Shown: piece by piece, positions 5,121 through 37,336 of the stretch
Position numbering within the stretch: the stretch's first letter is position 1
Layout: the number at the start of each line of letters is the position of its first letter
From: Macrostomum lignano
Taxonomy: Eukaryota
Length of the DNA: 37,987 bases
Direction: 5' to 3'
NCBI GenBank assembly: GCA_002269645.1
Contig: NIVC01002415.1
Span: forward strand, 1 to 37,987
The notes under the pieces: generated by a model
Databases searched by the model: none
Seen by the model: only the letters and a program-made list of their open reading frames with translations
Told to the model about the DNA's origin: nothing
Made by a program: the position numbers and the translations under genes

Positions 5121-5952
5121 TCAATCCACAATCATGCGTCCTTTGCCGAAGTTCATTCCGGCCTGACTGGCGCCCTTGTTGAAGCCCGCCTGCAGCCCAA
5201 TAACCGACTTGCTGGCGTTCATCTGTTCCTCGCTGAACTCCCGTTTGTTCTCCTCTGAAAGCTTTGGCCCCAGCACCGGGCCGGTGAATTCTGGGTGCAC
5301 CTGGCACTGAAAATTATTACTTCAATGCGTTAGTGAGCCACTCAGTCCGTTTTCAGACATCTCATAGTTATACCCACTATGGCTTAATTGTGACTCACCG
5401 TGCGGCCCAGAGCGAACAGGCACTGGGTAACCTGGCTGATGTCCTTCTTTTCGTACAGATCCACGGTCTGGAAAACATCAGTCGTGGGGACGCCGTAGGC
5501 CTTAATAGCATTCTGGAACGCATTGATGTTCTCCATTATCTTGAAGGGCATGCTGTTGGCTTCATTAATCTTCTTTACGCTGCCCGGCTTGATCTTGTTC
5601 ATCAGCTTGCACAGCACGATGCCTGCAATGTCGTGAATGGTTTTTGATATTAAATAAAACAAATGTTTAATGCACATGTAAATTTCACTTTTCGAATATC
5701 TCACCATTCTGCAGGATATTCTCATAGCCCTTATCTCTCTCTAGCTTCTCGCCAATAATAGCCTCAATCCAGTCGAGCACTTCAGCCTCCTGTCCTGGAT
5801 CGCGCTTTCCATCAAGCTGCGGAGTGAACACATTCCCTTACATAAATTACTTTATGTAAGTCAGTCAACATAATAAAAAATGAAAATCCTGTGTTACAAA
5901 CCTTTTTTTTGATCTGGGCGCTCAAGCCGTATGCAAGACCCTGGTTTGACAT
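5121..5952 (-). CDS. Calponin-family muscle protein (myophilin / Mp20-like), 190 aa, 4 exons
   Basis: Exons 5952-5902, 5816-5705, 5622-5399 and 5306-5121. GT-AG introns of 85, 82 and 92 nt with consistent phases; 573 nt from ATG to TGA. The protein MSNQGLAYGLSAQIKKKLDGKRDPGQEAEVLDWIE...DVFQTVDLYEKKDISQVTQCLFALGR...IGLQAGFNKGASQAGMNFGKGRMIVD is a CH domain plus one calponin repeat. Confidence 0.95.
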
Positions 5953-7231: not shown

Positions 7232-7267
<36 letters not shown>

Positions 7268-7286
7268 ACGAGAGCGAGAGAGAGAG

Positions 7287-7324
<38 letters not shown>
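7232..7324. repeat. (GA)n microsatellite
   Basis: Direct read, with a few interruptions. Confidence 0.95.
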
Positions 7325-7330
<6 letters not shown>

Positions 7331-8639
7331 GAAAAGTTCGTAACCCGTAAACTAAAAGAAAAAAGAAAACTATAAACTATTTTGGTAACAGTAACAGTGA
7401 TAACAGTAAACTAACTGCATAAAAAATTGAAACATTGATAACAGGGCTCAATGAGCTATAGCGAGCATTATAGATGAACTGTGAAAACATTGCACTGCAA
7501 AATAAAAAGGAAAACTTCTTCGAAAAAGAAGAAAAAGCAAATTTGATAACAGCAAACAGCGAGAACTACATGAGAAAAAGAAGTACTGATTAAATGGCTC
7601 AATGAGCTAGCATCTATTCCAAATACTTAAATTAGTATTATAATCTGTAGGGTCCTTCTGTATGGTTACATCTAACAATAGGGTTAGCCTATAGGCCTAT
7701 TGGTAATTAACCAAGGTGGTGCAGTGACGTCACGACAGATTAGGAGAATCCGCAGCGAGTGACAGGTAAGGATGCTGTGGTTGATGACAGGATTTTAAGT
7801 GAGAACAGGAGTAACAGGTGGATCTTGCAACTGGAAAAGATCGCATTGGAAAGAAATGCGGGCATGGCGACTGCAATGACTGCAGAGGATCCAACATCTG
7901 TACTGTGGTGCGAAGAGAACGATAAGGTCAAAGATGATCTTGAGGAGTGTGGCACCTGGGCATGTCGGCTTCGAGAAGCAATGGACAGAGGCTGGATAGG
8001 TTCACTGACAGCTATCATGTAAAGTAGGTCTGAGCCTATGAAGGATTTTGGACCACCTCCAATGAGGGGAAAATAAGCAGTGCGCAGGTTGTTTTTGTCA
8101 CTGTTCCACTTCATTCCTCCTCCCCAGTCGCTGATTCACATCTCGCAGGTACCAGCCAATGCATGCCCCGATGGCTGCGTCTGTCGTTTGGTACTTGGCA
8201 TCGTGTCTAAAAAGAAGGGTGATATTTAAAAGGGTGTTTCGCTGCTCCTGCTTGTTTGCTTAGTACGCATAAGCAACCTTATTAAAAAACGATGCAAAAT
8301 GATGCGTAAAATCTGCGTTACTTATTTAAATTAGAATTCTCAGAAAAGATGATGCAAAAAATTATTTACTGATTATTAAGCTCAAAGAGGTGATCATTTA
8401 TAAATGCATTTATCAGTGTATGCGTTAAATTATTTCACCAACCGCTAAATTGATCGTCATCTATGACAACAAAAAAAGACAAAATACGCTGACAATAAAA
8501 TACGCTGTCAGTGTCACAGGACGCGCCGAGGGCCAGGTCACGAATGAACGCCACGCCGCCGGCCGAATCAGGGGCGGCGGCGTCAGCGAGCAGGCAGTCG
8601 ACGATGAAACACCGAGCAGCGTCAGCAGCAGCAGCACCT

Positions 8640-9290
8640 CATCTCATGCACCGCATCTGCCGCGGCCCCCGGACCCTGGACCGCCTGGGGTCGGAAATCT
8701 GGCGGCTTATTAATTAATTGCCGGCCTGCATCTGTCTTCACCTCCAGTGGATATCCGGCCATGCGGGCATCCAAGGCAACGAGGACGCGGACCAGGCTGC
8801 CCGTCAGGCGCTCGATATGGATCAAGGCCCCGTGACTGCCAGCAGCGAAGCAGCGGCCCCCGTCGCCACCAGGACCATCTTGCGGACCTGGCGGAATATC
8901 CGCAAAAGGTCGCACCCGCTCCGCAGCGACACTCCGGGACACGACGACCTGGACCGCTGGGGCCAAGTCATTGTTAGCCAACTCCGCACGCTCCTCACCT
9001 CCGTCACCAGAGACTCGACTCACCGCTTTGGCCTGGCCCTGGATGATGGGTGCCCAGCGTGCAGGGAACCTGACAGTGCAGTTCACCTCCTCATCGACTG
9101 TCCGCACTACCAACCGGCTCGTAGTCAGGTCTGGGGAGGTGGCTGCATCAGCATCGACGACGTTTTCAGTAGGGAAGCGCGCCTCATCTGCCGCTACCTG
9201 CGCAGTGTGGGCCGCACGGACCCGCCTATTGATGATCCTGGCGGGCCGACGGCCCCTGCCCCTTGCCCGCGGGCGAGGACAGGCAGGAGT

Positions 9291-9292
<2 letters not shown>
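8640..9292 (+). mobile_element. 5'-truncated non-LTR retrotransposon 3' end (RNase H plus C-terminal CCHC knuckle)
   Basis: One frame across a TAA at 8715-8717 reads GSEIWRLIN*LPACICLHLQWISGHAGIQGNEDADQAARQAL (RNase H C-terminal motif) and CPACREPDSAVHLLIDC (CCHC). This layout is typical of RNase H-bearing LINE clades (I/Ingi/R1/Tad1 group). Confidence 0.85.

Positions 9293-9355
<63 letters not shown>
9293..9355. repeat. (AG)n microsatellite at the LINE 3' end
   Basis: About 31 perfect AG units. Confidence 0.95.
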
Positions 9356-9357
<2 letters not shown>

Positions 9358-9642
9358 CACCTCCTGCACCGACTGTGGGCAGTACGTCTCGGCGCGGATG
9401 ATGTGGCTTACTAGCTGGAGTCGCCGATGGCGCAACAGGTTGCTTGGACGGACCAGGCGTGCTCTCAATGTTTGGAATTCTTTCGTCAATTGTAAGCCGA
9501 AATGTTAGATTTACACGTAGTTCTCGTACCTTCGGGTCTTTTGGTACTGAGTGTAGCAAGTGTTTTTGTGTTTCTCCGCTCATGATTAGCAGACTGCCAG
9601 ATGCCAGTTTTTGCGAAAATACTACATTTGCTGCGTTTTTTA

Positions 9643-9828: not shown

Positions 9829-10311
9829 TCAACGGGTGCCAGTTGTCGTTCGCTTCGATTTTTGATCTTCCATAGGCGTACTCGGGCCATACCACATAAT
9901 CTTGCGGTTCTCGGGCCTCCCGTTGGTGTTGTGATGAAACGCCTTTAGAGCAATATCTTTTTCAATCATTTTTAGTAATTCATTAGGATTCTTAATGGCG
10001 TGTGGCGCATAGAGTACCTCACAGTTATTAGGAAATTTTTCGAGTTTTTCGTCTGTGCGATCTGGAGCCATTAGTTCAAACATGCTTTTGTTGTAGCAGA
10101 CCGCCTTGGGCTGGCTTGGTCTTCTTTTGTCCGTTCCGTTAGCCGTAGTTGCTCCTTGCACCGTAGCATGGTCAGTTGACGTAGGTCTTGCTGAGACTGA
10201 TGTCCTTGTGTTTGGCTTTTTGATAGTCGTGGCGGACGGAAGGGCCGTCGGCGAATCGGTATCTCGGGCAATTCGTTTCCCGTTTTCAGTGATTTCCTTA
10301 CTGCTACTCAT
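9829..10311 (-). CDS. Unassigned 160-aa ORF (possibly a retroelement ORF1/gag N-terminus)
   Basis: ATG-initiated and non-repetitive, with a basic Ser/Thr-rich N-terminus. No domain recognised. Confidence 0.25.
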   Translation of the reverse strand: MSSSKEITENGKRIARDTDSPTALPSATTIKKPNTRTSVSARPTSTDHATVQGATTANGTDKRRPSQPKAVCYNKSMFELMAPDRTDEKLEKFPNNCEVLYAPHAIKNPNELLKMIEKDIALKAFHHNTNGRPENRKIMWYGPSTPMEDQKSKRTTTGTR

Positions 10312-11392
10312 TCTTCAGCTATTAATTAGGCTTTTAATATAAAACTATTAAAAGATAAGTAAAACTGAGGTAGCTGGTCAAAATAAATGTCAGTTCAGGG
10401 TAAATACAAGCAGTTTTATAAAACAGAGGGTCAGATAAATGTAAAACAGTTCTAATATAAATTTAAATCAGTTCAATATAAAGAGAAGCTATTGGATTAG
10501 CAACAGTTAATAAGTAGCAGCAGCGTCCGCAAACCTCACACGCACTGCCACGTTAGAGTAAGAAGAAGAGAAAAGAAAAGAGAAGAGAAGAGACCCGACG
10601 AAATTTTGAAATAAATTAAATAATTAATGGAGAAAATTTTTTTTAGATAAAAGAGAGAGAAAGACCGAAAAACCTGAATTAAACTATTTATCCAAAAATA
10701 GGCAAAAAGCAAATAACTTCTAAATTAAAGAAAATAAGTTAAAAATAATTTAATTAATTTTGGAGGAAATTATCAAACTTAAAGGTAATTTAAACTACTT
10801 ATATTAAAAAATAGTGTAAAAGCGTATAGCAGGAAAAATTTGCAAATACGCCTAAAAATTAATTAATTTAGAAAAAAAAATTGGGCAGGGTTTCCCCAGG
10901 CCGAAGCCAATTAAATCAGCGAGGAAATCAAATAAATAGATAATAGCCTAGCTAACTAACAGGACAGCGCGTCCTAGACCCGACCCTTAAGAAGGAAGCC
11001 CTAAAAGCTTAAGACCCGAAAATAAATAAAATTGAGAGCAAAAAGAAAGGGGGGGAGTCTCAGGCCAGGGCAGGTGAGACAGGGACAGTGAAGTAACTAA
11101 AGAAAATAGACCCTAAGACATTCTAAAGGCCAAGAAAAAGAGAAGAAAAAAAACTTTAATCGAAATGAAAAATGAAGATGGAATTCACAATTAACTTACT
11201 GGCAGTAGTTTTGAAGACTTTTCGAGCAGATATCAGACCGGCCGTGCGTTGGCAGTGCGCGCAAGGCTTGGGGGGAGGGAGGACGGAAAATTCATTCCAG
11301 ACGGTCCGAGCTCGATATATTTTGTTTAAAAAAGTTATGACCATTTTCTCTTGCTTTTTAGTTATTTTTTCGACTTTGGCTATTGTCAGTAG

Positions 11393-11700
11393 TATATGGG
11401 TGGCCCAATAGATTTAAGCTTTTTTTCGAGTCGGATTTGATTGGAAATCAATCTAGAAACAATCTCCTACACGAATGAGTTGGTAGTGTGGGAAAAGTTG
11501 ACAAAATAAATAGGGGCCCGGGAGATACACTATACAGAGTTTAGGGAGACTAATACACTTTAGGGTTACCGATATATGGGTGGCCTGAGGGACTTGAGCA
11601 CAGTTTATTGAGTCGAATTGGATTGGAAATCAATCTAGAAATGATTTCCCACACGACTGAGTTGGTAGTGTGGGAAAAGTTGACGAAATACATAGGGGAG
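11393..11700. repeat. Diverged 180-bp tandem duplication
   Basis: tatatgggtggcc occurs at 11393 and 11573, each followed by gattggaaatcaatctagaaa...gagttggtagtgtgggaaaagttgac...ataggg. Confidence 0.85.
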
Positions 11701-12158
11701 ATATTAGGGTAGAGTGAGTGATAGAGATAGAGGTATAGGCAGAATGAATTCCAAATGTTAGTGAAATGTTGCTATAAATTCCATGTGAAATGGCAAACTC
11801 AGACTTGGTTCAGTCCTCAGTTATGGCATGTAGAAATTGCGCAAAAGCGATCCCCACAAGTTGCAGAATTTCTTCTGCCGATAGTAGTAATTAACGTTGT
11901 CGAATACTTAGCCTAACAGCGGTGGGTGGGTAGTGGCAGTTGCTGTGATCGCTTGTTACTGTTAGGCTGTTAGGCTGTAGTTTCATTCCTAATTGCACGA
12001 CGTGCCTTGTCTAATCTTTTACAGATTCCTCAATGGCCCACCACATTGACCAATCACGAGTGAGGTGTGATTTTAACATGAAATATAATCTTCATTCGCG
12101 CGTTCCTTTATTGATTTAATACTCGCTAACCATAGCCAGAACATATTTTCGCAGAAAA

Positions 12159-13062
12159 ATGACACGAGCAAATAATGCAGAGGCATTTTGCCCCATTGTG
12201 CCGTGCAACTGGCCCAAGAAGCTCCGCGCCGACTCATTGAAGCGCCACTTGCACAGCAAGTATAATATTAATGGCCAACCCATTTCGATAGCCGTGCAAT
12301 ATGCGAGACACGCCGAAAAAATAGACAGTGATGTTTTTAAGTGCGGGCTGTGTTATAAAGTAACACTAAGCTTCCAAGGCTTAAGAGATCACTACCGTTC
12401 AGCGCATTATCATGCAAACTTTGAAAGTCTTGCTGAATCGCAAAAGGCTGCCACAGCCTTTTACGAAAAAGTCCGAGAGTATTTTCGTGGTGGCGCTATC
12501 GACATGCGTCTACAAACGGAAATTCTGCGCTTGGTAAGACAATTACCTTTACCTTTACCTTTACCTTCTACTAAAACACTATGCTATCTAAAGTATCAAA
12601 TATTTTGCATTTTGCCCAAAAAATGTAGGCTTAGGTGTGAAAACGGTATTGTAGGCATACATTTGCATTTACATTGAAATAAATTAATATTGTTTGAAGC
12701 AATCAACAGTACACCAAATTTAAATCCCGGAAACCTTTAACCAGGCCACTGGTGCTGTCGATGATGCTGGTGCTGCCGCTGATGCTGGTGCTGGTGCTGG
12801 TGCCGGTGGTGCCGCTGATGCTGGTGCTGGTGCTGGTGGTGCCGCTGATGCTGGTGCTGGTGCCGGTGGTGCCGCTGGTGCTGGTGCTGGTGCCGGTGGT
12901 GCCGCTGATGCTGGTGCTGGTGCCGGTGGTGCCGCTGATGCTGGTGCTGGTGCCGGTGGTGCCGCTGATGCTGCCGCAGATTCTGCCGCTGATGCTGCCT
13001 CTCATGAAGCGGCCTCGGCCAATAATGCGACTTTGGATGTCTGCCTCCGTTTTTCTGGTGTT
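12159..13062 (+). CDS. Double C2H2-like zinc-finger exon (12159-12533) plus Gly/Ala/Asp-rich exon (12745-13062); 5' part of a spliced gene
   Basis: Fingers CPIVPC..LRADSLKRHLHSKY and CGLC..LRDHYRSAH. Phase-0 donor GTAAG at 12534; acceptor CCAG ending at 12744; open ATGAVDDAGAAADAGAGAG... frame to a phase-0 donor GTAAGC at 13063. CCAAT (~12050) and a TATA-like word (~12082) lie upstream. Confidence 0.6.
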
Positions 13063-13439
13063 GTAAGCAATTTTTTTCTCGTTTATGGTCAACAATGATT
13101 TTTTAATTTCTTATACAAGCTATATTAACGTGCGTTAGAGATATAGCTTGTTGGCTAAGGATGTCAATTCCCCGGAAAATTCACACCCCAGGGGAACTGA
13201 GGATTTTTCGGCAAAAACCCCGGTTCCCCGATCTCTGGGTCTCCGATCCCTGGGTTCCTCGGTCTCTGGGGTCCCCGGTCGTCTGTAACTGTGGATACAG
13301 TCAGTAATAGTACCATGTGTAGCATGTAGGCAAACTCCGGCCCACATGTTAAATGCGGCCCGCGAAGCCTCTCTATCCGTCCTTTGAAGCTTCTTCACAA
13401 TAGCAATCCGGCCCTGCTCAAAGTTAGTGCTTCCCAGTT

Positions 13440-13805
13440 CTTTCATCTCCTGTCTCATATCTCCCCTCGTCTCCTCATTTAATGTCTTCTCATCTCATTT
13501 TCTCTCATTTATCTCATCTCCTCTCCTCTCATCTCCTCTCCTCTCATCTCCTCTCATCTCATCTCTTCTTCCCTCTCTCCACTCTCCCCTCCCCTCCTCT
13601 CCTCTCTCCTCTCATCTCCTGTCCTCCCTTCCCTCTTTTAATCTCATCTCCCATCTCTCCTCTTATCTCCTCCCCTCTCAACTCCTTTCCTCTCTCTCTT
13701 CTCCTCTCTCACTCCTCTCTTATCTTCTCACTCATCTCTTCTTCTATTATCACATCTCTAATATCGCCTCTCACCTCCCCTCTCTTCTGCCTGTGTCTGT
13801 CTGTC

Positions 13806-13858
<53 letters not shown>
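13440..13858. repeat. Pyrimidine-rich low-complexity tract ending in (TCTG)n (13796-13858)
   Basis: CTCAT/CTCCT words with no AG dinucleotide seen. ORFs 13427 and 13482 are artefacts of this tract. Confidence 0.9.
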
Positions 13859-13860
13859 GG

Positions 13861-14340
13861 CATCCGGAGGCGGAAATAATATCACTAATAATAGCCAGTG
13901 ACGATACGGCTGTTTTCATTGCTGATGCCGGACATAAGGGGAAGGGGGCGTTCGCCTCCCGATATCTACGACGGAATGAGTTCGTCTGCGAGTATGCTGG
14001 CGAGCTTATAGAGTCAAGAAAGGTCATTAACCAGCGTGTCGAGCACTACCAACAACATGGCCTCGACACCTGGTACATTTTTGAGTTTGTTCATCACTCA
14101 AAAAGCTACGCGATTGACGCGCAGTACACCGAGCGACTCGGCCGCTTCCTGAATCACTCAAGGAGAAGTCCGAACTGTGTAGCCAGAACTATTTCAGTGC
14201 CTGTGGCCGGCAAAACGTGCCGCTTCGCACTTTATTTCATTACGAATCGTGCGGTCGAAAAGGGCGGAGAACTGCTGTTTGATTACGGCCCAAATGACCG
14301 AGAGACAATTGAAGCATGCACATGGCTTATTGACTGTTAA
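13861..14340 (+). CDS. SET-domain exon, KMT5A/PR-Set7 (H4K20 methyltransferase)-like
   Basis: Stop-free frame not listed in the ORF track: HPEAEIISLIIASDDTAVFIADAGHKGKGAFASRYLRRNEFVCEYAGELI...YIFEF..SKSYAIDAQYTERLGRFLNHSRRSPNC...ELLFDYGPNDRETIEACTWLIDC*. It has GxG, EYxGE, RFxNHS, ELxFDY and the SET8-type xxPW-like tail, with no post-SET cysteine cluster. Confidence 0.9.
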   Translation, partial: HPEAEIISLIIASDDTAVFIADAGHKGKGAFASRYLRRNEFVCEYAGELIESRKVINQRVEHYQQHGLDTWYIFEFVHHSKSYAIDAQYTERLGRFLNHSRRSPNCVARTISVPVAGKTCRFALYFITNRAVEKGGELLFDYGPNDRETIEACTWLIDC

Positions 14341-14444
14341 CTGTTGTTGCCTGACCCTAAACATTGCTCATACTAATTTCGCAGCGCTTGGCGCCCCCCC
14401 CCCCAGAACTGCGCTTTGCCGCCCCTTTGGAAACGCTGCCGCTT

Positions 14445-16260
14445 TCCTGGCGCCCCCATAAAGAAACTGGCGCCCTAACCCTATAAGCTGCCCCCCCCTA
14501 TAAAGAAACTGGCGCCCCCCATAAAGAAACTGCCCCCCTATAAAGAAACTGGCGCCCCCCATAAAGAAACTGTCCCCCCCCCTATAAAGAAACTGGCGCC
14601 CCCCATAAAGAAACTGTCCCCCCCCCTATAAAGAAACTGGTGCCCCCTAAAAGAAACTGGCGCCCTAAACCTATAAGCTGCCCCCCCCCTATAAAGAAAC
14701 TGGCGCCCCCATAAAGAAACTGCCCCCCTATAAAGAAACTGGCGCCCCCCATAAAGAAACTGTCCCCCCCCCCTATAAAGAAACTGGTGCCCCCTAAAAG
14801 AAACTGGCGCCCTAACCCTATAAGCTGCCCCCCCCCTATAAAGAAACTGGCGCCCCCCATAAAGAAACTGCCCCCTATAAAGAAACTGGCGCCCCCCATA
14901 AAGAAACTGTCCCCCCCCCCCTATAAAGAAACTGGTGCCCCCTAAAAGAAACTGGCGCCCTAACCCTATAAGCTGCCCCCCCCCTATAAAGAAACTGGCG
15001 CCCCCCATAAAGAAACTGCCCCCCTATAAAGAAACTGGCGCCCCCCATAAAGAAACTGTCCCCCCCCCTATAAAGAAACTGGCGCCCCCCCCCATAAAGA
15101 AACTGTCCCCCTATAAAGAAACTGGCGCCCCCCCCATAAAGAAACTGTCCCCCTATAAAGAAACTGGCGCCCCCCCCATAAAGAAACTGCCCCCCTATAA
15201 AGAAACTGGCGCCCCCCCCATAAAGAAACTGTCCCCCTATAAAGAAACTGGCGCCCCCCCATAAAGAAACTGTCCCCCCATAAAGAAACTGTCACCCCCC
15301 ATAAAGAAACTGCCCCCTATAAAGAAACTGTCACCCCCCATAAAGAAACTGCCCCCCATAAAGAAACTGTCACCCCCCATAAAGAAACTGTCCCCCTATA
15401 AAGAAACTGGCGCCCCCCCATAAAGAAACTGTCCCCCTATAAAGAAACTGGCGCCCCCCATAAAGAAACTGTCCCCCCCCATAAAGAAACTGTCCCCCTA
15501 TAAAGAAACTGGCGCCCCCCATAAAGAAACTGTCCCCCTATAAAGAAACTGTCCCCCCCCATAAAGAAACTGTCCCCCTATAAAGAAACTGGCGCCCCCC
15601 CATAAAGAAACTGTCCCCCCCCATAAAGAAACTGTCCCCCCCCATAAAGAAACTGCCCCCTATAAAGAAACTGGCGCCCCCCATAAAGAAACTGTCCCCC
15701 TATAAAGAAACTGGCGCCCCCCCCATAAAGAAACTGCCCCCTATAAAGATACTGGCGCCCCCCCATAAAGAAACTGTCCCCCTATAAAGAAACTGGCGCC
15801 CCCCATAAAGAAACTGTCCCCCATCCATAAAGAAACTGTCCCCCTATAAAGAAACTGGCGCCCCCCCAATAAAGAAACTGTCCCCCTATAAAGAAACTGG
15901 CGCCCCCCCCATAAAGAAACTGTCCCCCTATAAAGAAACTGGCGCCCCCCCCCATAAAGAAACTGTCCCCCTATAAAGAAACTGGCGCCCCCCCATAAAG
16001 AAACTGCCCCCCTATAAAGAAACTGGCGCCCCCCATAAAGAAACTGTCCCCCCCCCCCCTATAAAGAAACTGGTGCCACTTAAAAGAAACTGGCGCCCTA
16101 ACCCTATAAGCTGCCCCCCCCCCTATAAAGAAACTGGCGCCCCCCATAAAGAAACTGCCCCCCCCCCTATAAAGAAACTGGTGCCCCCTAAAAGAAACTG
16201 GCGCCCCCCATCTATAAGAAACTGGCGCCCCCCATCTATAAGAAACTGGCGCCCCCTAAC
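14445..16260. repeat. ~1.8-kb C-rich minisatellite (ATAAAGAAACTG + GCGCCCCC/TCCCCC, ~20-bp subunits)
   Basis: Invariant ataaagaaactg core with variable C runs. The marker ggcgccctaa(c/a)cctataagctg occurs at 14469, 14659, 14806, 14954 and 16092. Confidence 0.95.
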
Positions 16261-17654: not shown

Positions 17655-18677
<1,023 letters not shown>

Positions 18678-19084: not shown

Positions 19085-19500
19085 ATGACATCTAATGAAA
19101 AAAGTAAAGAATGTGCGCTCTGCGGCCAGAGAATGAGGCTTGACAATCTCAAGCGCCATTGCGGCTTATTGCACAAAGCGTTCCTACATCGTATTCATGA
19201 ACTGCGATGGTTCGCCATCTTTGAGCAAAAAGTGCGGGTCGAAAATGCCGGCATGTGCTGCATTGCTGATTGCCGAGAAGCCAGCAAGCAGATGCGCGAC
19301 CACTACCGACACCACCACGAAGACGTAGTGCAGCACAACGGCCAGCCCATGAAGGGTCCAGCACATATACGGCTTGTCCGTGACTATGCGCAGGCAGTGT
19401 CGTGCCTGCAGCGCGACAGGCCCTTCAGCAGGATCGCCCTTTGCCACCGCATCCTTCGAAGTGGCATCGATTCATTGAGCGGGCAGCGAGCCAGCAACAT
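19085..19500 (+). CDS. Second double C2H2-like zinc-finger exon, paralog of 12159
   Basis: Fingers CALC..MRLDNLKRHCGLLH and CIADC..MRDHYRHHH. Ends at donor GTGAGT (19501, phase 2). CCAAT (~18935, ~18996) and TATATAA (~19028) lie upstream. Confidence 0.6.
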
Positions 19501-19803
19501 GTGAGTTTTTTGCTTCCTTTTTGCTTTATTTTTTTGCTTTTGTTTAGTTTATTAGTTCCAGCTTTAATAGATAACATTTTCAATAGATAACAAGTATAAT
19601 TAGTCTATAACCAGGGTGTCGGACCACTTTTTGGCATGATCCTGCGAATGCCCTTTTTGAATTTTAAACAAGTGTTGGCCCGTTTTGGGCTTTGGCTTTT
19701 CTGGGTCTTTTTAATGTTTTTTTCTGAGGTTACATCAAAAATGTAAAAAGTGTTAAAAGGTAATAATGGCCATCACCCTCAATCGGGTATGTGGACATAT
19801 AAT

Positions 19804-20679: not shown

Positions 20680-20915
20680 TAGGTGAAAGGAGGCGACGAA
20701 ATAAAGGAGAAGATAGTAGGCGAGATGAGAGATGAAAAAGGAGAGGATTGAGAGAAGGGAGATGAATGAGGAGAGAGGAGAGAAGGGAGAAGAGAATGGA
20801 GAGGAAAAGGGAGATGAGGGGAAGGGAAAGAGGTGAGGATATGAGATGGGAGGAGAGAGGAGAGGAAAGAGAAGAGGAGAGAGGTGAAGAGATGAAAGAA
20901 TTGATGACAGAGGAG
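20680..20915. repeat. Purine-rich low-complexity tract
   Basis: GAGAT/GAGGA words, compositionally the mirror of 13440-13790. Confidence 0.85.
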
Positions 20916-20949
20916 AGGAGCATTTTCACACTCTTTATTACTACTTTCA

Positions 20950-22771: not shown

Positions 22772-24646
22772 CCATTAGCCTCCCGCGTCTATTTTTGCTC
22801 ACCCCGTAGCCTCCCGTAGCAGCTCTGCTGCCATAGATTTAAAAGCTGAAAACTGGTAGAAAATTATTTCACCCCCACTCCCTCCTTAACTTTCTGTAAA
22901 AAAATAAATATTGAAACATTACTAGACATCAGTAGGAAGTAGTATGATGAAAATGATGAAAGTGAAAATATTGGTAGAAGTTGCTTGCATTATAATTCTA
23001 ACTACACCCGCTGTCTATGGCCAGCAGATCGAGTCAGAGCCTGCTAAAAATAGCTACCAGCCATGCTTCTAGAAGCAGCCCAGGACTGGTGTGAGAGTTT
23101 TACATAGACAAACCGAAGTCACTTTTTGCCATAAACAGATATTGCTTCGTATATCCATCTTATTTGTTATGCGTAGTGTAAAGAGATGAGACAAGTATTG
23201 CAAGCATAGACATTTCTACGTAAGTGATTGCCATAGACAATAAGATTTGGGTTTTCGAAGGGATGAATGCAATACAGTATTGCATATATGTTCTTCTCCT
23301 GTGAAATGAGGATAAACCAATAATAAATATTTTTTATCAATATTCCCCACAAATATAATTTTTCAAACAATATTCTACAATGCAAGCTGGCAATCCAACC
23401 CTTCAAAATTTGGGCTTGGATAGCGACTCAGATGACGAATCATACGTGACTGCATCTGGTACCAGTGGAGGCTCCTCTGATGAGCAAAGTGACCTTGAGG
23501 AGGTCCAGATTGTGAATCCGCCAGACAACATCGAAGATAACTGGCATGATACCACTCCGGAAACGGATCATCGGCCCAACCCACTTCCCGAGTTTCTCGG
23601 CTTGCCTGGTCTGCATCCGGCTTTTCTTGTGCCGGACAACATTGAAAATAGTGTGGCTGCCATCCTTGGTCAGTTTCTTCCCGACAGTCTGCTGCAAAGT
23701 TTGTGTGACTGGACAAACGCCAGAGCAGACAGAGCTGTCACGCAAATTCAACAAGAAAACGGAGAGCTGCCATGGAAGCTCCTAAATTGGAAGCCATGCA
23801 ACCTGAATGAAATGAAGAAGTTTATCGGAATTCTGCTGCACATGGGAGTAGTACAGAAGCCAGATATTAGCATGTATTGGTCAACCGATCTAATGTACCA
23901 TCAGGACTTCTTCCACCATGAGTCATGTCTGTCGCGTAACAGGTTTCAGCTCATCATGACCTGGTTTCGCTGCTACGATTGCACGGAGGTGAACGAAGCT
24001 GATCCGCAGTGCAAGATTAGACCTTTTTTAAACAAAGTCCAGTCCATCTGTCAAAATAAGTACATGCCACATCAACATACTTCTGTTGACGAGTCATTGC
24101 TACTTTACAAAGGTAGGCTCCACTGTCTTCAGTACATGCCCAACAAAAAGGCAAAGCTCGGCATCAAGCTGTATTGTCTAGCCGAATCGAACAGCGGCTA
24201 TTTGTGGAACTTTCTGATCCACTCCACTGCGGCCCAAAACAACCTGTTCGGCCAGGATGCGCAGCAGCTGTCGCTCTCGGAACGCATCGTCGTAGAACTG
24301 TCTCGGGATATCTTGGACCTCGGGTACAGGATCTTTTGTGACACCTGGTTTTGCTCGGCACGGTTGCTCCAGAGAGACACTCTGTTGACAGGCACAGTGC
24401 GAGCACAACGCGGCGTTCCCGCGGCTCTGAAGCAGCAGGTGTTGCACCCACCATCCAACGCCTTTTCTAGGCGTGGGGATCTGCTTGCTGTGAAGATTGT
24501 GGATCGGCGAGCCTCTGGCCTAAAGACCGTGTACATGCTAGACAGTGCTGGCTCGGCCAACTGTGTGCAAGTTACAAGGGTTCAGCGAGGCAGTCGGGAG
24601 CGGCAACTGTTAAAGTCTCAGACAGCTCTAGACTACAAAGTAGAAG
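22772..24646 (+). mobile_element. piggyBac transposon, 3'-truncated
   Basis: Transposase ORF at 23380. The putative left end is TTAA|CCATTAGCCTCCCG, with tagcctcccg repeated at 22776 and 22807 and gtctatggc/gccatagac subterminal words. No right end was found, so the left boundary is tentative. Confidence 0.7.
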
Positions 24647-24690
24647 GCATGAGGGGGCTTTTGGGACAAAATTTTTCACATCCTCCATAA
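23380..24690 (+). pseudogene. piggyBac-family DDD transposase, lacking the third catalytic Asp
   Basis: Acidic N-terminus, then MSRNRF-like LSRNRFQLI, SVDESLLLYKGR, YMPNKKAKLGIK and FCDTWFCS. Homology ends at ALDY, before the expected GGVD motif and the C-terminal Cys-rich domain. Confidence 0.93.
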
Positions 24691-26305: not shown

Positions 26306-26401
26306 CCTAGTTCCTTGTTAGGAGCGCACAAAATAAACCCTGCTCCCGAGCGTCCGCCCTCTCTCCCCGTGCACCCACCCTCTCTTCCAAAACACCCACC
26401 C

Positions 26402-26764
26402 TCAGCCAATTCCTAATCCCAACTTTGTCTTTCCCAAAATAACCGCCTTGACTAATTTCCGAGCAATAGACTCACGAAACCCGCTTGAAGTCCCCATATT
26501 GTCTAATCTCCTAAGCATTTCTTTGTCCCAACGATTCTTCTCCTCTGGAAAATTCCTATACTTAACGTCGTGCCACATGCAGACAGAGTCTAGCTCGTTC
26601 ACAGGTTCATGCCCAGGATTTGGATTATTGCTTTTATCTAACTGTATTTCAAGTGGATTCAAAGGCCCGCAATATTTGTAGCCGGGAATTGTCCAGCCTT
26701 TGTTTGGATGAGGAAGATTTTCTATCAGTCCATATGAATCTAAATTACCGCCAGAGCGTTGCAT
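26402..26764 (-). CDS. Parvovirus VP1u-type phospholipase A2 (Polinton/adintovirus PLA2X-like), 120 aa
   Basis: IPGYKYCGPLNPL (Ca-loop region), PVNELDSVCMWHDVKY (catalytic HD plus Y), D..ML..L and a terminal KLGLG. The ORF is intact. Confidence 0.88.
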   Translation of the reverse strand: MQRSGGNLDSYGLIENLPHPNKGWTIPGYKYCGPLNPLEIQLDKSNNPNPGHEPVNELDSVCMWHDVKYRNFPEEKNRWDKEMLRRLDNMGTSSGFRESIARKLVKAVILGKTKLGLGIG

Positions 26765-26794
26765 TATTTTATTTAAAGTTTTCTTTTTTTAAAA

Positions 26795-27827
26795 ATGACA
26801 GATCAGAAACTTCAAAAGCTCTACTACAGTGACAAAGGATTCTTTGTAGGAAAAAATGCAGTCACCAAACTTGCAGAACTAAGTAAGAAACCAAAAGCTA
26901 CAGTAAAAAAATGGCTCTAAGCAGGCTGTCTTTCAAGTCTATTTCCCACCAGTAAAATTTGAAAGGCCCCATTTCAGTATTTATAAACCTAATGAGGCGC
27001 ACCAAGCAGATCTTCTGTTTCTCCCCAATGACTCAGGCTACAAGTATGCTCTCAGAGTTATAGACATTGCCTCCAGATATAAAGAGGCTCGTCCACTAAA
27101 GACTAAACAATCAGAAGCATTTGCTAATACGCTACAAGATATTTATAAAAAACTCACCCCTTAGTTACCCTGAAATCTTTATGACCGACCCGGGTAAAGA
27201 ATTCCTAGGCAAGGACCACTAGAACTTCTAGTGGTCCTTGTTCCTAGGTGCAGTGAAATCACTTCTACATAAGTATGACACAAAAATTCGCTACGGAAGA
27301 ACTGAGCTCCACAGAGACCAAGCGTACGTTGAGAGATTCAATCTAACTCTAGCCAAGAGACTATTCACTAAGCAGACAGCAGAGGATCTGAAACTAAAAA
27401 GTGGCCAATACTATACAAAATGGAAGGACCGCCTCCCCATTGTTATAGAGCAACTGAACAATGAAGTCACACGCATGACTCGATTGAAACAGTCCCATGC
27501 AATTAAACAAGACACTGTCGAACTTAAGGCATCTCATAGAACAGACACCTCGAACTACCCTAAGCTTCCAGGAGTTGAATCACCATACAAACTGACAAAC
27601 TCTGAGTTTCTACGCTTTTTATATCTACCTGGAGAGCTAGAGAAAGACACCAAAAAAGAGCTACAGATCCATACTTCAGCCTTGATGTACATAAAATAGA
27701 CAGACATTTCACCTCCGACTCTGGAGAGTATTACTTTTTATCTCAGGCCTTTAACCCTAAATCCCCCACGCGGTCATTCACTAGAGCTGAACTCCTAGTG
27801 ATACCAGCTGACACAGAAATTAATTAA
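26795..27827 (+). pseudogene. Retroviral-like DDE integrase of Polinton type
   Basis: Across frameshifts: HQADLLFLP, VIDIASRY, MTDPGKEF, YVERFNLTL and YLPGELE..KRATDP. At least four frameshifts plus a 39-bp insertion. Confidence 0.92.
27210..27240. mobile_element. 31-bp palindromic insertion with 8-bp TSD
   Basis: CAAGGACCACTAGAA-C-TTCTAGTGGTCCTTG (two perfect 15-bp inverted arms) flanked by TTCCTAGG at 27202-27209 and 27241-27248. Confidence 0.85.
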
Positions 27828-27843
27828 AATATTAAAATAAAAA

Positions 27844-28290
27844 ATGACAAAGATTGAAACCAGAACCATCAATAAACTCAATAAAATGATTGAATCAAAG
27901 AAACCAGGTCTTATATCAATTAAAGGTGTCAAAGTAAAAATCAATCCCGTGCAGCAAATAGTTCAGTGTAATGAGCAAAGACTCAGCATTACAGATGAAA
28001 AGTCAGGAGGAATCCTACCATTAGCAGCTCTTATCCCAATCATTGCAGGCGCTGTAAGTGCCGCAGGTGGTGTAGCTGGAGGTGTAGCAACTGCTGTTAA
28101 AGCTGGGAATCATAGAGCCCACCAGCTAGAATTGCAAAAGATTGCAAGAGACAAAGGTATAACAATTAAGGCAGGAGAGGGCTGCCCCGATCGTGATGAT
28201 TGTGATCATGAAAATTCTTTTAGCAAGTCTGACATTGTCAAAGCCATCATGACACTGCACAATGCTGGGTTTACAATAATGCGCATGTGA
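27844..28290 (+). CDS. Adenovirus pX-like virion protein precursor, 148 aa
   Basis: KSGG|ILPLAALIPIIAGAVSAAGGVAGGVA resembles adenovirus pX MRGG|ILPLLIPLIAAAIGAVPGIA. The ORF is intact. Confidence 0.7.
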   Translation: MTKIETRTINKLNKMIESKKPGLISIKGVKVKINPVQQIVQCNEQRLSITDEKSGGILPLAALIPIIAGAVSAAGGVAGGVATAVKAGNHRAHQLELQKIARDKGITIKAGEGCPDRDDCDHENSFSKSDIVKAIMTLHNAGFTIMRM

Positions 28291-28413
28291 TGAGGTTTAA
28301 AACCCAACTTTATCCAGCTTCATAAACCCAACGCTACTGATAGGATGTTAGAAACAGTTCAACTTTTCTATCAGGGTCGTCACCCTCAAAAGTTTTTTAT
28401 TTTATAGAAAAAA

Positions 28414-31400
28414 ATGCGAAAAGCCAATCCAGCAAAAGATTTAGTCTACAAATATTTTTCAAAAGGCGTCTCATTTCAAGACAAAAGTAATTTACTAAGA
28501 GAAGCATGTAAACAAAAGTTTAACACCGACCCTGGTCACCTGGGAAGCTATGAAAAACAGTTGGAAATCATCAATCAATTAGAATCCAACCAGTATGCGC
28601 CTATAAAAAATCCTGCAAAGGAACACCAAGAGAGGAGTCGCAACTTAGTTAACAAATACGAAACTCTCACTGGCGAAAAAGCAAAGTACCCACAAAATAA
28701 GCAGGAACAAGAGAAATTAAAGCAATTAATCCATTTAAAAGAGTCGGAGCTTGCCATTGAAGAGATTAATTTTGCACAGAGGAAGTTTACAGAACATTAC
28801 ATAGAGTACACAATCCCAATTAACAACACCAACCACATTAACGACACCAACGGCACCACCGCAAACATCTACGACTATAAAGACAGCATCCAATCAATTT
28901 TTGATCACACACTCAAAACACGCAAGACCTTTAAACTACAGATATCATTCAAGATTGCGTTTTATACGCCTGCAAAACTCACTGAACATCTCGAGTATTA
29001 CATGACAACAAAGGCAAAGCCATTCACCCCTACAGACACACATGGATCCTTTCCTTCAAGATGTCACTAAGAAAATTGAAGCGTTTACATCCAGAGGTTC
29101 CGGATGGGTCGTGGGAGGGATTCAAAGAGCGACTGTTATGGTCATGAAATATGACCCACTTAAAGCCTCCTCTTATATAGAGCCCCCGCATAAGCTAGCC
29201 GGCAAAAAAGCTTGCATAAATGTTAAAAATAAAGACAATTGCTGTGCTCTATGGGCAGTTCTTTCTGCACTTCTTCATGATAGTGTCCCTGACCACCCCG
29301 AAAGAACCTCAAATTATCAAAATTATTTCAACTACTATCTCATCGAATGCGAAAAGAAGGGAATCAGGTTTGACAAAGGAGGCTTGGCGATCTCTCATAT
29401 TCCAAAGCTAGAAGAAGTGTTTAATAACAAAATTAGAATCACAGTCTTTGAGTGGAGTGAAAAAAACTGAGAAAGTTCAACCGGTCAGATGTAGCAAAGA
29501 CGTTTTAGATCCTGAGGGGAAAAGGCGGACTGAAGTGGATCTTCTAGTGATTGGTAATTTACTAGAGGAGGCTCACTATGTTTGGATTAAAATCATTCAA
29601 GACTCATTCACAAGCAGTTGAAAATTCATCACGAGGCTGTTGCCATCTGCCGCTTGTGCCTTAAGCATTACAGTGGACCTGAGCGCATTGAAAAACTAGC
29701 AGAGCATGAATTATCATGTGAAGATCACCCAACTAACTGCTCTCTTCCTTCAGCTGAAGAGAAGTATCTCCGTTTTAAGAACTATCACAAGATGGAGAAG
29801 CTCCAATTTGTTGTATATGCTGATTTCGAATGCTCAATCATGCCAGAAACTCAATAACAAACTCAAACTCAAAAACATGTCCCCAATTCAGTAGCATATG
29901 CCTTTATAAATACAAAAGGACTTGTTGAGTCTAATTATTTCTTTGGAGAGCAGTGTGTGGAGCAGTTTATTGCCAGAATGTTAGAGTTGCAAAAATTGAT
30001 TAGCACCCTTCAGCCTGTTTCGGGGGCGTAGCCCAGCGGTAGCGCAGCTGCTCTGGTGTGCCAGCGACTCAGGCTCGATTCCAAGTGCAGTCACATTAAT
30101 TTGGGGCTGAATTGGAATCTCGGCTTGGCTCTGCTCGTGCAATTAACGGCCTTGAGAGCCAACCCCCCAAGGCGCAGTGAAGTGTACATGCCTAACGGTA
30201 AAATAAAGTTAGGGCCGCTGTACACTCCTGTGTGAGTGTGTGCCTGCGTACGTATCCGCGCGCTTAAATGCCTGCTCAAGGGAGTCGGCGGAATGGGCAG
30301 TAATGCCTCTCGCCGGTTGTGTGCCTAAGTCGCTTAAAGTGCGCCAGGGTGCACACAACCCCCCTGCCTCTAATAAAAAAATTCAGCCTTTCCAATAATT
30401 ATGTCTGAGGAGGATGAAAGCAATTTCCTATCAGCAACTAATTGCCACATCTGCAGGAAACAGTTAACTTGCACTGATATTAAAAACCCCACCGTTAGGG
30501 ACCACTGCCACTATACTGGGAAATTTAGAGGTGCAGCGCATAACACTTGTAATCTAAAGCTAAAATCGAACATTCATGATCTAACGATATTTTGTCACAA
30601 CGCAAAGAACTATGACATGCATTTAATAGTTGAAAAATCGGCATGATTCCAGACATACACCTTGATTGCATCGCAGAGAACAAGGAGAAGTTTAAGTGTG
30701 TTGATATTAAACAGGATAATTCGGTTAAAGGTTCGAGTGAAGGTAAAATAAGACTGAAGGATTCATATCAATTTCTAGCTGCCAGTCTAGACGAACTAAG
30801 CAAGAATCTAAAAGATGAACAATGTACATGTACAAAGATATTTGCTAATAAAATTAACAACACTGATGAATCATTTAAACTTTTAAGAAAGAAAGGCTTC
30901 TACCCCTATGAAAATATTACTGGGTATCACGTATTTGAAGAAGGTTTACCACCACAAGAAAAGTTCTTTTCAAAGCTAACAGACTCTGGAATCTCTGACA
31001 AAGACTATGAGCACGCGAAGCATGTCTATAATTACTTTAATTGTCAAAACTTCTTCCAGTATCACCTGCTTTACCTCTACACAGATGTGTTTCTGCTGGC
31101 TGATGTGTTTGAAACCTTCCTTCAGATACACCTGGTACACAGCATATGGCCTTGATCCAGCACATTATGTGTCTCTGCCTGCTACTAGCTGGGAATCTTT
31201 GCTTAAAATGAAATGGGACCAAGATCCATATCGTTAACAGGTATGCAAAGGCAAACAATCCCTACATTTAATCTTACAATAAGAAGCAGCCCTCAAACTA
31301 CATAACTTACTTGGACGCTAATAATCTCTACGGGTGGGCGATGAGTCAAGATCTTCCAGTTAGAGATTTTCGATGGCCAATTGTATCAGAATTCAAATGG

Positions 31401-36790: not shown

Positions 36791-36970
36791 AAGTTTCGAG
36801 CTCCGGTTGTTGTCAGGCAGCGGTAGTTAGGATGTGGTAGTGCGAATATCTGTCTCCCTCAAAAATATCTTGGGGAATTGGATAGTGTCCATTTGGAGAA
36901 TTCCTTTTTTAACCATCTCTAACAATAAAAATGAAAACTCTGTCTGCGTGTGTCTGTCTGTGGACAAGGG

Positions 36971-37012
36971 TTAGGGTTAGGGTTAGGGTTAGGGTTAGGG
37001 TTAGGGTTAGGG
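36971..37012 (+). repeat. (TTAGGG)7
   Basis: Direct read. Confidence 0.95.
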
Positions 37013-37336
37013 TTTCTTCCATACTTTCTCTCTCCTGATCCTTTTCCACCCTTTCCCTCAGCCACTCCCGACCCCATCTTTTTCTCCTCTGCGCTCCCAT
37101 TCGCTCACTGTACCCCTCGCGCGCTCCCATTGGCAGTAACCTCCTCTCAGTTTTTATATTTATTAAATATACCTGATCCAACTTAGGACTCTTTACTAAC
37201 TAATTGCTCCTGAAGAAGGTTTTAAACCGAAACGCGTCGAGCACCAAATCCCTTTTTAGCTACTGTCTTTTTAGCCTTCCTTATTTTAAGTGCTCAGCGG
37301 CCGACTGGTCTGACGGATCAGTAATCCTTGTCCTAA

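What the first reader, a model, noticed from the sequence alone, without database searches (positions are those of the whole stretch)
12159..14340. Candidate zinc-finger / Gly-Ala linker / PR-Set7-like methyltransferase gene hidden from the ORF track
A complete SET8-type catalytic domain (13861-14340) lies co-oriented 0.8 kb after two well-spliced exons encoding two C2H2-like fingers and a Gly/Ala linker. The linker exon ends in phase 0, and the first AG after the 420-nt AG-free pyrimidine tract (13868-13869, a weak GAG) is also phase 0 and in the SET frame. Canonical KMT5A has no zinc fingers, so a fusion would be a potentially sequence-targeted H4K20-type methyltransferase. The TE-rich setting raises the possibility that it is transposon cargo. 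The exon linkage is inference, and the native acceptor may have been destroyed by the repeat insertion.
Basis: partly seen in the sequence, partly recalled or inferred. Interest (0 to 1): 0.72.

Follow-up and report, generated by a model that had tools for sequence, protein, structure and literature searches.

The report
Zinc-finger plus SET8-like methyltransferase gene

Summary
Exon 1 (12159-12533) encodes two C2H2-like fingers. Exon 2 (12745-13062) encodes a Gly/Ala/Asp linker built on a 30-nt minisatellite. A start-codon-free open frame (13870-14340) encodes a complete SET domain whose best solved-structure matches are KMT5A/SET8 (E 2e-18). All junctions are phase 0 with GTAAG donors.

The linkage is supported by relatives. 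The 387-aa spliced model aligns end to end (E 1e-41) with P0005, a single uninterrupted 349-codon ORF from an unidentified sequencing run. It aligns in two blocks with a Macrostomum lignano hypothetical protein (P0048), whose gene has one short intron in the linker. A tree built from SET domains alone groups these three.

It is a divergent paralogue, not the KMT5A orthologue. It has Phe at the Phe/Tyr switch, so H4K20 monomethylation cannot be assumed. Two widely spaced fingers do not support sequence-specific targeting.

Transposon cargo is not shown: I detected no neighbouring transposase or terminal repeats. However, the flatworm gene sits just after a KDZ transposase gene, and both genomes carry a finger-only paralogue downstream.

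Doubts remain: a weak acceptor after a repeat-filled intron, a lost zinc ligand in finger 1, and no expression data.

The parts
12050..12090 (+). Possible core promoter: a CCAAT box at 12050-12054 and an A/T-rich TATA-like stretch about 70 nt before the ATG
   Evidence: Read from the sequence. This is inference only; there is no transcript evidence.
12159..12533 (+). Exon 1 (125 codons, from the ATG): the paired C2H2-like finger module followed by a helical region
   Evidence: Translation. Donor TTG|GTAAGA, phase 0. Homologous to the N-termini of P0005 and P0048. A profile of the module hits classical C2H2 fingers in the PDB: ADR1 at 1.3e-4 and Zif268 at 2e-4.
12189..12263 (+). Finger 1 (CPIVPC...RADSLKRHLHSKY). 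The last zinc ligand is Tyr, where four relatives have His.
   Evidence: Alignments A1 and A3; coordinates.
12342..12407 (+). Finger 2 (CGLC...LRDHYRSAH), a classical CX2CX12HX4H
   Evidence: C62, C65, R76, H78 and H83 are invariant in all 5 family sequences.
12534..12744 (+). Intron 1 (211 nt, GTAAGA...CAG). If retained, the frame stops at 12675-12677.
   Evidence: 12745 is the only in-frame acceptor not followed by a stop.
12745..13062 (+). Exon 2 (106 codons, phase 0 at both ends): a Gly/Ala/Asp linker on a 30-nt minisatellite (12784-12973) plus a unique 3' part (...SHEAASANNATLDVCLRFSGV). Skipping it would keep the frame.
   Evidence: The P0005 alignment runs without a break across the exon 1/2 junction. 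The unique 3' part aligns weakly with the CLR-containing stretch before the SET domain of P0048.
13063..13869 (+). Intron 2 (807 nt, GTAAGC...GAG). It holds a CT-rich low-complexity tract (about 13438-13792) and a (TGTC)n microsatellite (13794-13858). The acceptor is weak.
   Evidence: The CT-rich tract has a 72%-similar inverted counterpart at 20706-20920.
13870..14340 (+). Exon 3 (156 codons plus TAA): the N-flank helix and a complete SET8-like domain at the very C-terminus. Motifs: GHKGKGAF (13930-13953), CEYAGELI (13987-14010), RFLNHS (14143-14160), ELLFDYG (14269-14289), ACTWL (14314-14328).
19085..19504 (+). Finger-only paralogue (139-aa ORF with the same two-finger module and no SET domain). 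Its stop codon overlaps a GTGAGT donor-like site.
   Evidence: The flatworm locus has a matching finger-only ORF downstream of its finger-SET gene.

Best explanation
12159-14340 (+) is a three-exon gene for a 387-aa protein. From N- to C-terminus it has a module of two C2H2-like zinc fingers with a helical extension, a flexible low-complexity linker, and a SET8-like catalytic domain that ends the protein.

It belongs to a small, patchily distributed, undescribed family. Only two other members turned up: P0005 from an unidentified sequencing run, and a Macrostomum lignano hypothetical protein.

The inferred mechanism is that the SET domain transfers methyl groups from S-adenosylmethionine to a lysine, while the finger module tethers it to a chromatin, nucleic-acid or protein partner. 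By homology the substrate would resemble a histone H4 tail. However, the Phe at the Phe/Tyr switch predicts products beyond monomethyl, and the altered C-flank leaves the substrate open.

Shown: the parts, their order and phases, the homology, and the intact catalytic motifs. Inferred: splicing, expression, substrate, and the role of the fingers.
For: (1) Pfam SET scores 62.7 bits, and the best solved structures are KMT5A at 2e-18.
(2) All near-invariant residues of 154 SET8-like domains are kept: EY, G, D, R, NHS, N, E, DYG, WL.
(3) The spliced model aligns colinearly with P0005 over 378 columns (31% identity, E 1e-41). The alignment covers the fingers, helical region, linker and SET domain. 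P0005 is a single ORF of 349 codons on contig L001.
(4) P0048 of Macrostomum lignano matches in both the finger block (3e-7) and the SET block (1e-21). Its gene has one GT..AG intron of 96 nt in the linker.
(5) A neighbour-joining tree of SET domains alone gives (window, P0005), then P0048. Fingers and SET have therefore travelled together.
(6) Both donors are GTAAG, all junctions are phase 0, and each acceptor is the only usable in-frame one.
(7) The SET frame has no Met, so it needs upstream exons.
(8) There is no stop or frameshift in 387 codons.
Against: There is no transcript evidence, and the source genome is not in the protein collection.

The intron-2 acceptor is a weak GAG. It follows 430 nt of CT-rich repeat and a microsatellite. 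The codons just upstream (HPE) may be a remnant of an older, longer exon, so the native acceptor could be gone.

Finger 1 has Tyr where four relatives have the last His.

The SET domain matches only 30 of 44 family-consensus positions, which puts it in the lowest 5%. P0005 (35) and P0048 (31) are similarly divergent.

Exon 2 is a young minisatellite open in several frames.

No canonical AATAAA was seen by eye in the 107 nt between the stop codon and the start of a 1.8-kb satellite.
Confidence: 0.62

Rival explanations
1. Recently disabled copy. The locus descends from a finger-SET8-like gene, but repeat growth in intron 2 removed the native acceptor. The fused mRNA is no longer made. The intact frames only reflect how recently this happened.
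For: The acceptor is a weak GAG directly after a (TGTC)n array and a 355-nt CT-rich tract. The AG-free state is compositional. Finger 1 has lost its last His. A satellite begins 107 nt after the stop codon. The setting is rich in transposable elements.
Against: There is no stop or frameshift in 387 codons. All near-invariant catalytic residues are kept. Both donors and the exon-2 acceptor are good. The first AG after a long pyrimidine tract is the site normally used (established splicing knowledge).
Confidence: 0.25
2. Transposon cargo. The finger-SET gene, perhaps together with the finger-only gene, is carried by a DNA transposon. It would modify chromatin at or for the element. This is compatible with either reading above.
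For: In Macrostomum lignano the relative lies 723 nt downstream of a KDZ (PF18758) transposase gene on the same strand. In both genomes a finger-only paralogue follows on the same strand. The family is very patchy: only 2 relatives carrying these fingers turned up among the best 150 SET hits of a search of 1.8 billion representatives. SET genes are known cargo of Harbinger and MuDR transposons in oomycetes (PMC12730594).
Against: The window holds no KDZ relic. I detected no transposase homologue close to the gene: the piggyBac ORF lies 9 kb downstream, and no TTAACCC ends bracket the region. No terminal inverted repeats were found. The three flatworm loci are more than 99.4% identical over 16 kb, as expected for haplotypes or homeologues rather than dispersed copies. 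The KDZ protein shares no finger similarity with the family. The gene has spliceosomal introns.
Confidence: 0.15
3. Two unrelated genes. A small zinc-finger gene (exons 1-2) happens to lie upstream of a separate SET8-like gene whose own 5' exons are elsewhere.
For: The exon linkage in this window is inference only. Finger-only genes of this family exist (19085-19504; flatworm ORF 9951-10823).
Against: Two relatives carry fingers and SET in one protein. Their SET domains are the window's closest relatives. The SET frame has no Met and begins exactly where homology to P0005 begins. Order, strand and all phases agree.
Confidence: 0.05

Closest known systems
KMT5A / SET8 / PR-Set7 (histone H4 Lys20 monomethyltransferase)
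   Same: It is the best-matching solved structure (E 2e-18), and the alignment runs from the N-flank helix to the C-terminal WL motif. The SET domain ends the protein with no Cys-rich post-SET region. The GxG, EYxGE, NHS and DYG motifs are kept.
   Different: Identity is only about 35-45%. The domain groups with the finger-bearing proteins rather than with annotated KMT5A of flatworms. The protein has N-terminal zinc fingers. It has Phe where SET8 has Tyr334, the switch whose Y334F change gives a dimethylase (my own knowledge of the SET8 literature). It has Cys where SET8 has the His of AHPWL. The whole SET domain lies in one exon.
P0005 (Logan run SRR19430222, unnamed) and P0048 (Macrostomum lignano PAA66912.1, 'hypothetical protein BOX15_Mlig001681g4')
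   Same: They share the same two-finger module, a spacer, and a C-terminal SET8-like domain in the same order. The SET domains are each other's nearest neighbours. P0005 also has Phe at the switch and a repeat-bearing low-complexity linker.
   Different: Overall identity is only 31-36%. P0005 is intronless, P0048 has one intron, and the window has two. P0048 has a short non-repetitive spacer and Tyr at the switch. Both relatives keep the last His of finger 1, which the window lacks.
PRDM proteins (PR/SET domain plus C2H2 finger arrays, e.g. PRDM9)
   Same: The general logic is the same: a SET-type methyltransferase joined to C2H2 fingers in one polypeptide.
   Different: PRDM proteins have a different SET subfamily; the window protein gave no PRDM2_PR hit. 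Their fingers form C-terminal tandem arrays, whereas here two spaced fingers sit at the N-terminus.
Transposon-borne or transposon-fused SET genes (HarbingerS and MuDR of Phytophthora; primate SETMAR)
   Same: A SET methyltransferase is associated with mobile DNA (PMC12730594). The flatworm relative neighbours a KDZ transposase gene.
   Different: No transposase is linked to the gene in this window. The SET subfamilies and hosts differ. A search for KDZ transposon terms together with 'SET domain' returned no report linking the two.
Other N-terminal C2H2 plus SET8-like proteins from environmental transcript and genome assemblies (P0018, P0020, P0065, P0067, P0116)
   Same: 9 of 155 SET8-like representatives carry a C2H2 pattern before the SET domain (P0005 among them; P0048 escaped the pattern). 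Some begin CPxxxCxW, as the window does.
   Different: Their finger regions are not significantly similar to this module (E 0.02-0.8). They have long coiled-coil spacers. Their SET domains do not group with the window's.

Membership tests
SET-domain lysine methyltransferases (Pfam PF00856) | Score above the curated Pfam threshold across the whole domain | tested here: met
   62.7 bits against a cut-off of 22.4, covering profile positions 1-105 of 105.
SET-domain lysine methyltransferases (Pfam PF00856) | Cofactor and catalytic motifs (GxG, EYxGE, NHS, xDY) are intact | tested here: met
   GHKGKGAF, CEYAGELI, RFLNHS and ELLFDYG are present. Every column conserved at 99-100% across 154 relatives is kept.
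SET8/KMT5A-like subfamily | Closest to KMT5A among SET classes, with the SET domain at the extreme C-terminus, an N-flank helix and a C-flank WL | tested here: met
   KMT5A chains score 2e-18 against 4.6e-11 for the next class. The alignment reaches chain residue 158 of 160. Top named hits are annotated [histone H4]-lysine(20) N-methyltransferase.
KMT5A orthologue (the host's own H4K20 monomethylase) | Groups with canonical KMT5A, with high identity in the SET domain | tested here: not met
   The best identity to anything is 45%. The neighbour-joining tree places it with P0005 and P0048, apart from annotated flatworm KMT5A.
KMT5A orthologue (the host's own H4K20 monomethylase) | Tyr at the Phe/Tyr switch (human Tyr334) and the His of the AHPWL C-flank motif | tested here: not met
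   ELLFDYG against ELLYDYG, and EACTWL against EAHPWL, in the alignment to 5teg_A. The roles of these residues come from my knowledge of the SET8 structural literature.
KMT5A orthologue (the host's own H4K20 monomethylase) | Methylates nucleosomal H4K20 | not testable with these tools
   This needs an enzyme assay.
Classical C2H2 zinc finger | The CX2-4CX12HX3-5H ligand pattern and a profile score above threshold | tested here: inconclusive
   Finger 2 fits exactly. Finger 1 is CX4CX13HX4Y. All Pfam finger models score below their cut-offs (zf-C2H2_4 15 against 27; Zn_SUZ12 21.9 against 28). The family profile hits ADR1 and Zif268 at about 1e-4. The AlphaFold models were too poor to judge (pLDDT 41 and 52).
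Finger-SET8-like family (P0005, P0048) | Colinear two-finger module, spacer and SET8-like domain, with SET domains that are mutual nearest relatives | tested here: met
PRDM family | A PR-type SET domain with a C-terminal tandem C2H2 array | tested here: not met
   No PR-domain hit, no tandem array, and the fingers are N-terminal.
Transposon cargo gene | Lies inside an element bounded by terminal repeats together with a transposase | tested here: not met
   No KDZ relic. No inverted repeats bracket 10300-14450. The ORFs around the gene that I scanned against Pfam or read gave no transposase match.
Transposon cargo gene | Multiple dispersed copies in the genome | not testable with these tools
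   The source genome is not available. The window holds a single SET copy.

The most novel reading that the evidence does not exclude
The finger-SET8-like gene and its finger-only partner form a conserved two-gene chromatin cassette. It would travel with, or derive from, DNA transposons (KDZ in the flatworm). The shared finger module would direct the methyltransferase, and its catalytically empty paralogue, to the same targets. This would be an animal counterpart of transposon-borne epigenetic modifiers such as the TET/JBP genes of fungal KDZ elements.
Probability: 0.1. Interest if true: 0.8.

Novelty: new variant of a known kind. Interest (0 to 1): 0.5.

Why it matters
SET8/KMT5A is normally a single-copy, finger-less enzyme recruited through PCNA and the nucleosome. 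A paralogue lineage that carries its own zinc-finger module would be a different way of placing a SET8-type mark, or a di-methyl mark, given the Phe switch. This lineage is present in at least a flatworm, an unidentified organism and the source of this window.

The finger-only paralogue next door in two distant genomes, and the KDZ transposase neighbour in one of them, raise a testable link to mobile DNA.

On a practical level, the case shows that a complete catalytic exon can be invisible to ATG-based ORF tracks.

Tried and rejected
- **Word-indexed protein searches.** The SET exon gave only two weak SET hits. Exon 1 and the finger profile A1 gave nothing.
- **Exact look-ups** of the exon-1 ORF and of the piggyBac ORF found nothing, so the source genome is not in the collection.
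- **AlphaFold2.** The full model (pLDDT 41) and the finger module (pLDDT 52) were too poor to use, so no fold search was run.
- **Metagenome scan.** It returned 38 SET-only relatives, none with the finger module. The viral-contig scan found nothing, and the finger alignment was too divergent to scan with.
- **KDZ transposase relic in the window.** None was found by tblastx or by phmmer --max against six-frame pieces.
- **Terminal inverted repeats and piggyBac-type TTAACCC ends** around the gene: none.
- **Shared upstream sequence** between the two finger genes: none above shuffles.
- **A second SET copy** in the window or after the finger-only ORF: none.
- **Rfam and tRNA scans:** empty.
- **Literature.** No paper on finger-SET8-like proteins or on KDZ elements with SET genes was found. 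The sequencing run SRR19430222 is not cited anywhere.
- **The AG-free tract as a selected AG-exclusion zone** was rejected, because composition explains it.
Full report
**1. What is in the sequence**

The window is repeat-rich animal-type DNA. It holds satellites, microsatellites, TTAGGG-type hexamer runs, a piggyBac transposase ORF, an RNase H fragment and a Maverick/Polinton-like block.

- **Exon 1.** It opens at ATG 12159 and encodes two C2H2-like fingers followed by a helical stretch.
- **Exon-1 boundary.** The donor is TTG|GTAAGA with GT at 12534-5. The exon therefore ends at 12533, which is 125 codons in phase 0.
- **Intron 1.** If it is retained, the frame stops at 12677. Downstream, the only in-frame AG not followed by a stop is CAG|G, which gives an exon start at 12745.
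- **Exon 2.** 12745-13062 is 106 codons of Gly/Ala/Asp-rich sequence. It is built on a 30-nt minisatellite (6.3 copies, 96% matches) and ends at GTT|GTAAGC in phase 0.
- **Exon 3.** The SET frame is open only from 13762, holds no Met, and runs to TAA at 14338-14340. The region 13438-13867 has no AG. The first AG (13868-9) starts a codon of the SET frame.

The spliced product is 387 aa.

The ORF list shows only a 47-aa piece of the SET frame. The gene really is invisible to a start-codon-based track.

**2. How much of this is beyond chance**

The SET domain is unambiguous. It scores 62.7 bits on Pfam against a 22.4 cut-off, and KMT5A chains match at 2e-18 against 4.6e-11 for the next SET class.

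- The AG-free tract is 85% pyrimidine, and 8% of mononucleotide shuffles also lack AG.
- Exon 2 is open in several frames on both strands because it is a minisatellite.

On internal evidence alone, the linkage would rest on GTAAG donors, matching phases and the absence of a Met in the SET frame.

**3. Evidence from relatives**

A full HMMER scan of 1.8 billion representative proteins with the SET exon found nothing above 45% identity.

*P0005.* The best single-domain hit is P0005 (349 aa, 118 bits), and it has the same architecture. It carries two N-terminal fingers (CPLC...LLRHIKLIH and CKLC...MRLHLEACH), a helical stretch, a Gly/Ala/Thr/Ser-rich linker with its own tandem duplication, and a C-terminal SET8-like domain. 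It is one uninterrupted ORF on a 1683-nt contig from run SRR19430222. Upstream of it I read what looks like a tRNA-derived SINE and an acceptor-like site. This is my reading, not a tool result, and it suggests the contig is genomic. The window's spliced model aligns with P0005 in one colinear alignment of 378 columns (31% identity, E 1e-41). That alignment crosses the exon 1/2 junction without a break and re-enters strong similarity exactly at AEIISL, the first codons after the proposed acceptor.

*P0048.* A second relative was picked out by searching the 150 hits with the finger region (E 4.5e-7). It is Macrostomum lignano PAA66912.1, annotated 'hypothetical protein BOX15_Mlig001681g4'. It matches the window in the fingers (3e-7) and in the SET domain (1e-21). 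Its gene has one 96-nt GTGAGT...CAG intron in the spacer between fingers and SET.

*Tree and further searches.* A neighbour-joining tree from SET domains alone puts the window with P0005, and then with P0048. This is independent of the fingers and shows that the two halves have evolved as one gene. No further members were found in 38 metagenomic SET loci or in viral contigs.

**4. The finger module**

Five sequences define the module: the window's two copies, P0005, P0048 and a flatworm ORF. The invariant positions are C11, R23, L27, H30, C62, C65, R76, H78, H83 and A98.

A profile of the module hits classical fingers in the PDB: ADR1 at 1.3e-4 and Zif268 at 2e-4. All Pfam finger models stay below their thresholds.

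The two fingers lie about 25 residues apart, not in a TGEKP-linked array. In the window's finger-SET copy, the last His of finger 1 is Tyr (RHLHSKY).

Sequence-specific DNA targeting is therefore not supported. A tethering role through DNA, RNA or protein is the most that can be inferred.

**5. The catalytic domain**

All columns that are 99-100% conserved among 154 SET8-like domains are kept. Overall the window matches 30 of 44 consensus positions, which is the lowest 5%. Its two relatives score similarly, at 35 and 31.

The position equivalent to human Tyr334 is Phe (ELLFDYG), as in P0005. From the SET8 literature, which I cite from my own knowledge, Y334F converts the enzyme from a mono- to a dimethylase. 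The His of the AHPWL C-flank is Cys here.

It is therefore a divergent SET8-like paralogue. It is not the host's KMT5A, and H4K20 monomethylation should not be assumed.

**6. Transposon cargo?**

*In the window.* No KDZ relic turned up (tblastx; phmmer --max). The ORFs around the gene that I checked gave no transposase match. No inverted repeats bracket the gene, and no piggyBac-type ends were found.

*In the flatworm.* The relative lies 723 nt after a KDZ (PF18758) transposase gene on the same strand. However, the three loci that carry it are more than 99.4% identical over 16 kb. That fits haplotypes or homeologues rather than dispersed copies.

*An unexpected parallel.* Both genomes carry a finger-only paralogue downstream on the same strand.

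- In the window it is 19085-19504, 4.7 kb after the SET stop codon.
- In the flatworm it is ORF 9951-10823, about 1 kb after the SET stop codon. A profile built without it detects it at 3.1e-9.
- In the flatworm, a 553-nt, 100%-identical direct repeat precedes each of the two genes.

SET genes are known cargo of Harbinger and MuDR transposons in oomycetes (PMC12730594). My literature searches turned up no report for KDZ elements or for animals. Cargo status remains a minority possibility.

**7. Is this copy alive?**

*For:* 387 codons without a stop or frameshift, intact catalytic motifs, good donors, and a CCAAT plus TATA-like upstream region.

*Against:*

- The acceptor is a weak GAG, placed right after a microsatellite and a CT-rich repeat. 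The repeat has an inverted counterpart at 20706-20920.
- The upstream codons HPE could be a remnant of a longer ancestral exon (P0005 has SPE at that position).
- Finger 1 has lost a zinc ligand.
- A 1.8-kb satellite starts 107 nt after the stop codon.
- There are no expression data.

I put about 0.6 on a currently spliced, functional gene, about 0.25 on a recently disabled copy, and 0.05 on two unrelated genes. The remainder is uncertainty not assigned to any of these. Cargo status overlaps these readings and stands at about 0.15.

**8. Verdict**

The fusion architecture is supported by independent relatives. The claims of H4K20 specificity and sequence targeting are not supported. Transposon cargo is unproven.

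The family is undescribed; its only named member is a 'hypothetical protein'. It is a new variant of a known kind of enzyme rather than a new kind. Interest is moderate, at 0.5.

Noticed in passing
window 19085-19504 (+): A 139-aa ORF with the same two-finger module but no SET domain. It has CCAAT and TATA motifs upstream, and its TGA stop overlaps a GTGAGT donor-like site. A matching finger-only ORF follows the finger-SET gene in Macrostomum lignano (L002 9951-10823).
   Followed up: partly
L002 4767-11211 (Macrostomum lignano NIVC01001431.1): Three features lie on one strand: a KDZ transposase gene, then the finger-SET gene, then the finger-only ORF. A 553-nt, 100%-identical direct repeat (7232-7784 and 9065-9617) precedes each of the two finger genes, and a partial third copy lies at about 10963-11211. 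Satellite arrays flank the block.
   Followed up: partly
L005, L006, L007/L008: After P0005 and P0048, the nearest SET-domain neighbours in the tree are small stand-alone SET proteins (135-171 aa). They sit on contigs with giant-virus-type genes such as a capsid N domain, a DUF5906 helicase-primase, and AAA or F-box-ankyrin proteins. The tree is neighbour-joining at about 35% identity, so this grouping is weak.
   Followed up: no
P0003 (Phyllopteryx taeniolatus XP_061624999.1) and the P0009/P0155 cluster (Dissostichus eleginoides): Very long teleost gene models carry 2-5 SET8-like domains. One of them (3363 aa) also has phage-integrase SAM-like domains, which suggests arrays of SET8-like units in repeat or recombinase-element contexts.
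   Followed up: no
window 26400-31800: A block of ORFs typical of a Maverick/Polinton- or adintovirus-like element: a parvovirus-type phospholipase A2 domain (26402-26764, - strand, E 1e-13), a type-B DNA polymerase fragment (30643-31155), and several unassigned ORFs. The polymerase is split over several ORFs, so the element looks degraded. It was not assembled or examined further.
   Followed up: no
window 23380-24690 (+): A 436-aa piggyBac-type transposase ORF (DDE_Tnp_1_7, E 1e-53, profile positions 5-293 of 349). The C-terminus is truncated, and there are no TTAACCC-type ends nearby.
   Followed up: partly
window 5384-5725 (-): By eye, an ORF that reads like a calponin-homology domain exon (transgelin/calponin/myophilin type). 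It is probably part of an ordinary host gene.
   Followed up: no
window 36967-37014 and 37332-37378: Two perfect 8-copy runs of the telomere-type hexamer in opposite orientation (AGGGTT and CCTAAC), 318 nt apart. A short CCCTAACCC stretch ends the 14-nt satellite at about 21900.
   Followed up: no
window 14447-16256, 1426-2416 and 18103-18677: Large tandem arrays: a 21/40-nt C-rich satellite that starts 107 nt after the SET stop codon, a 22-nt G-rich satellite, and (AGAT)144.
   Followed up: no
window 13438-13792 and 20706-20920: CT-rich low-complexity tracts about 72% similar to each other in inverted orientation. Both begin next to a shared TTCTTTCATCTC motif, so they may be two diverged copies of one repeat family. 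One lies inside intron 2 and the other lies after the finger-only gene.
   Followed up: partly
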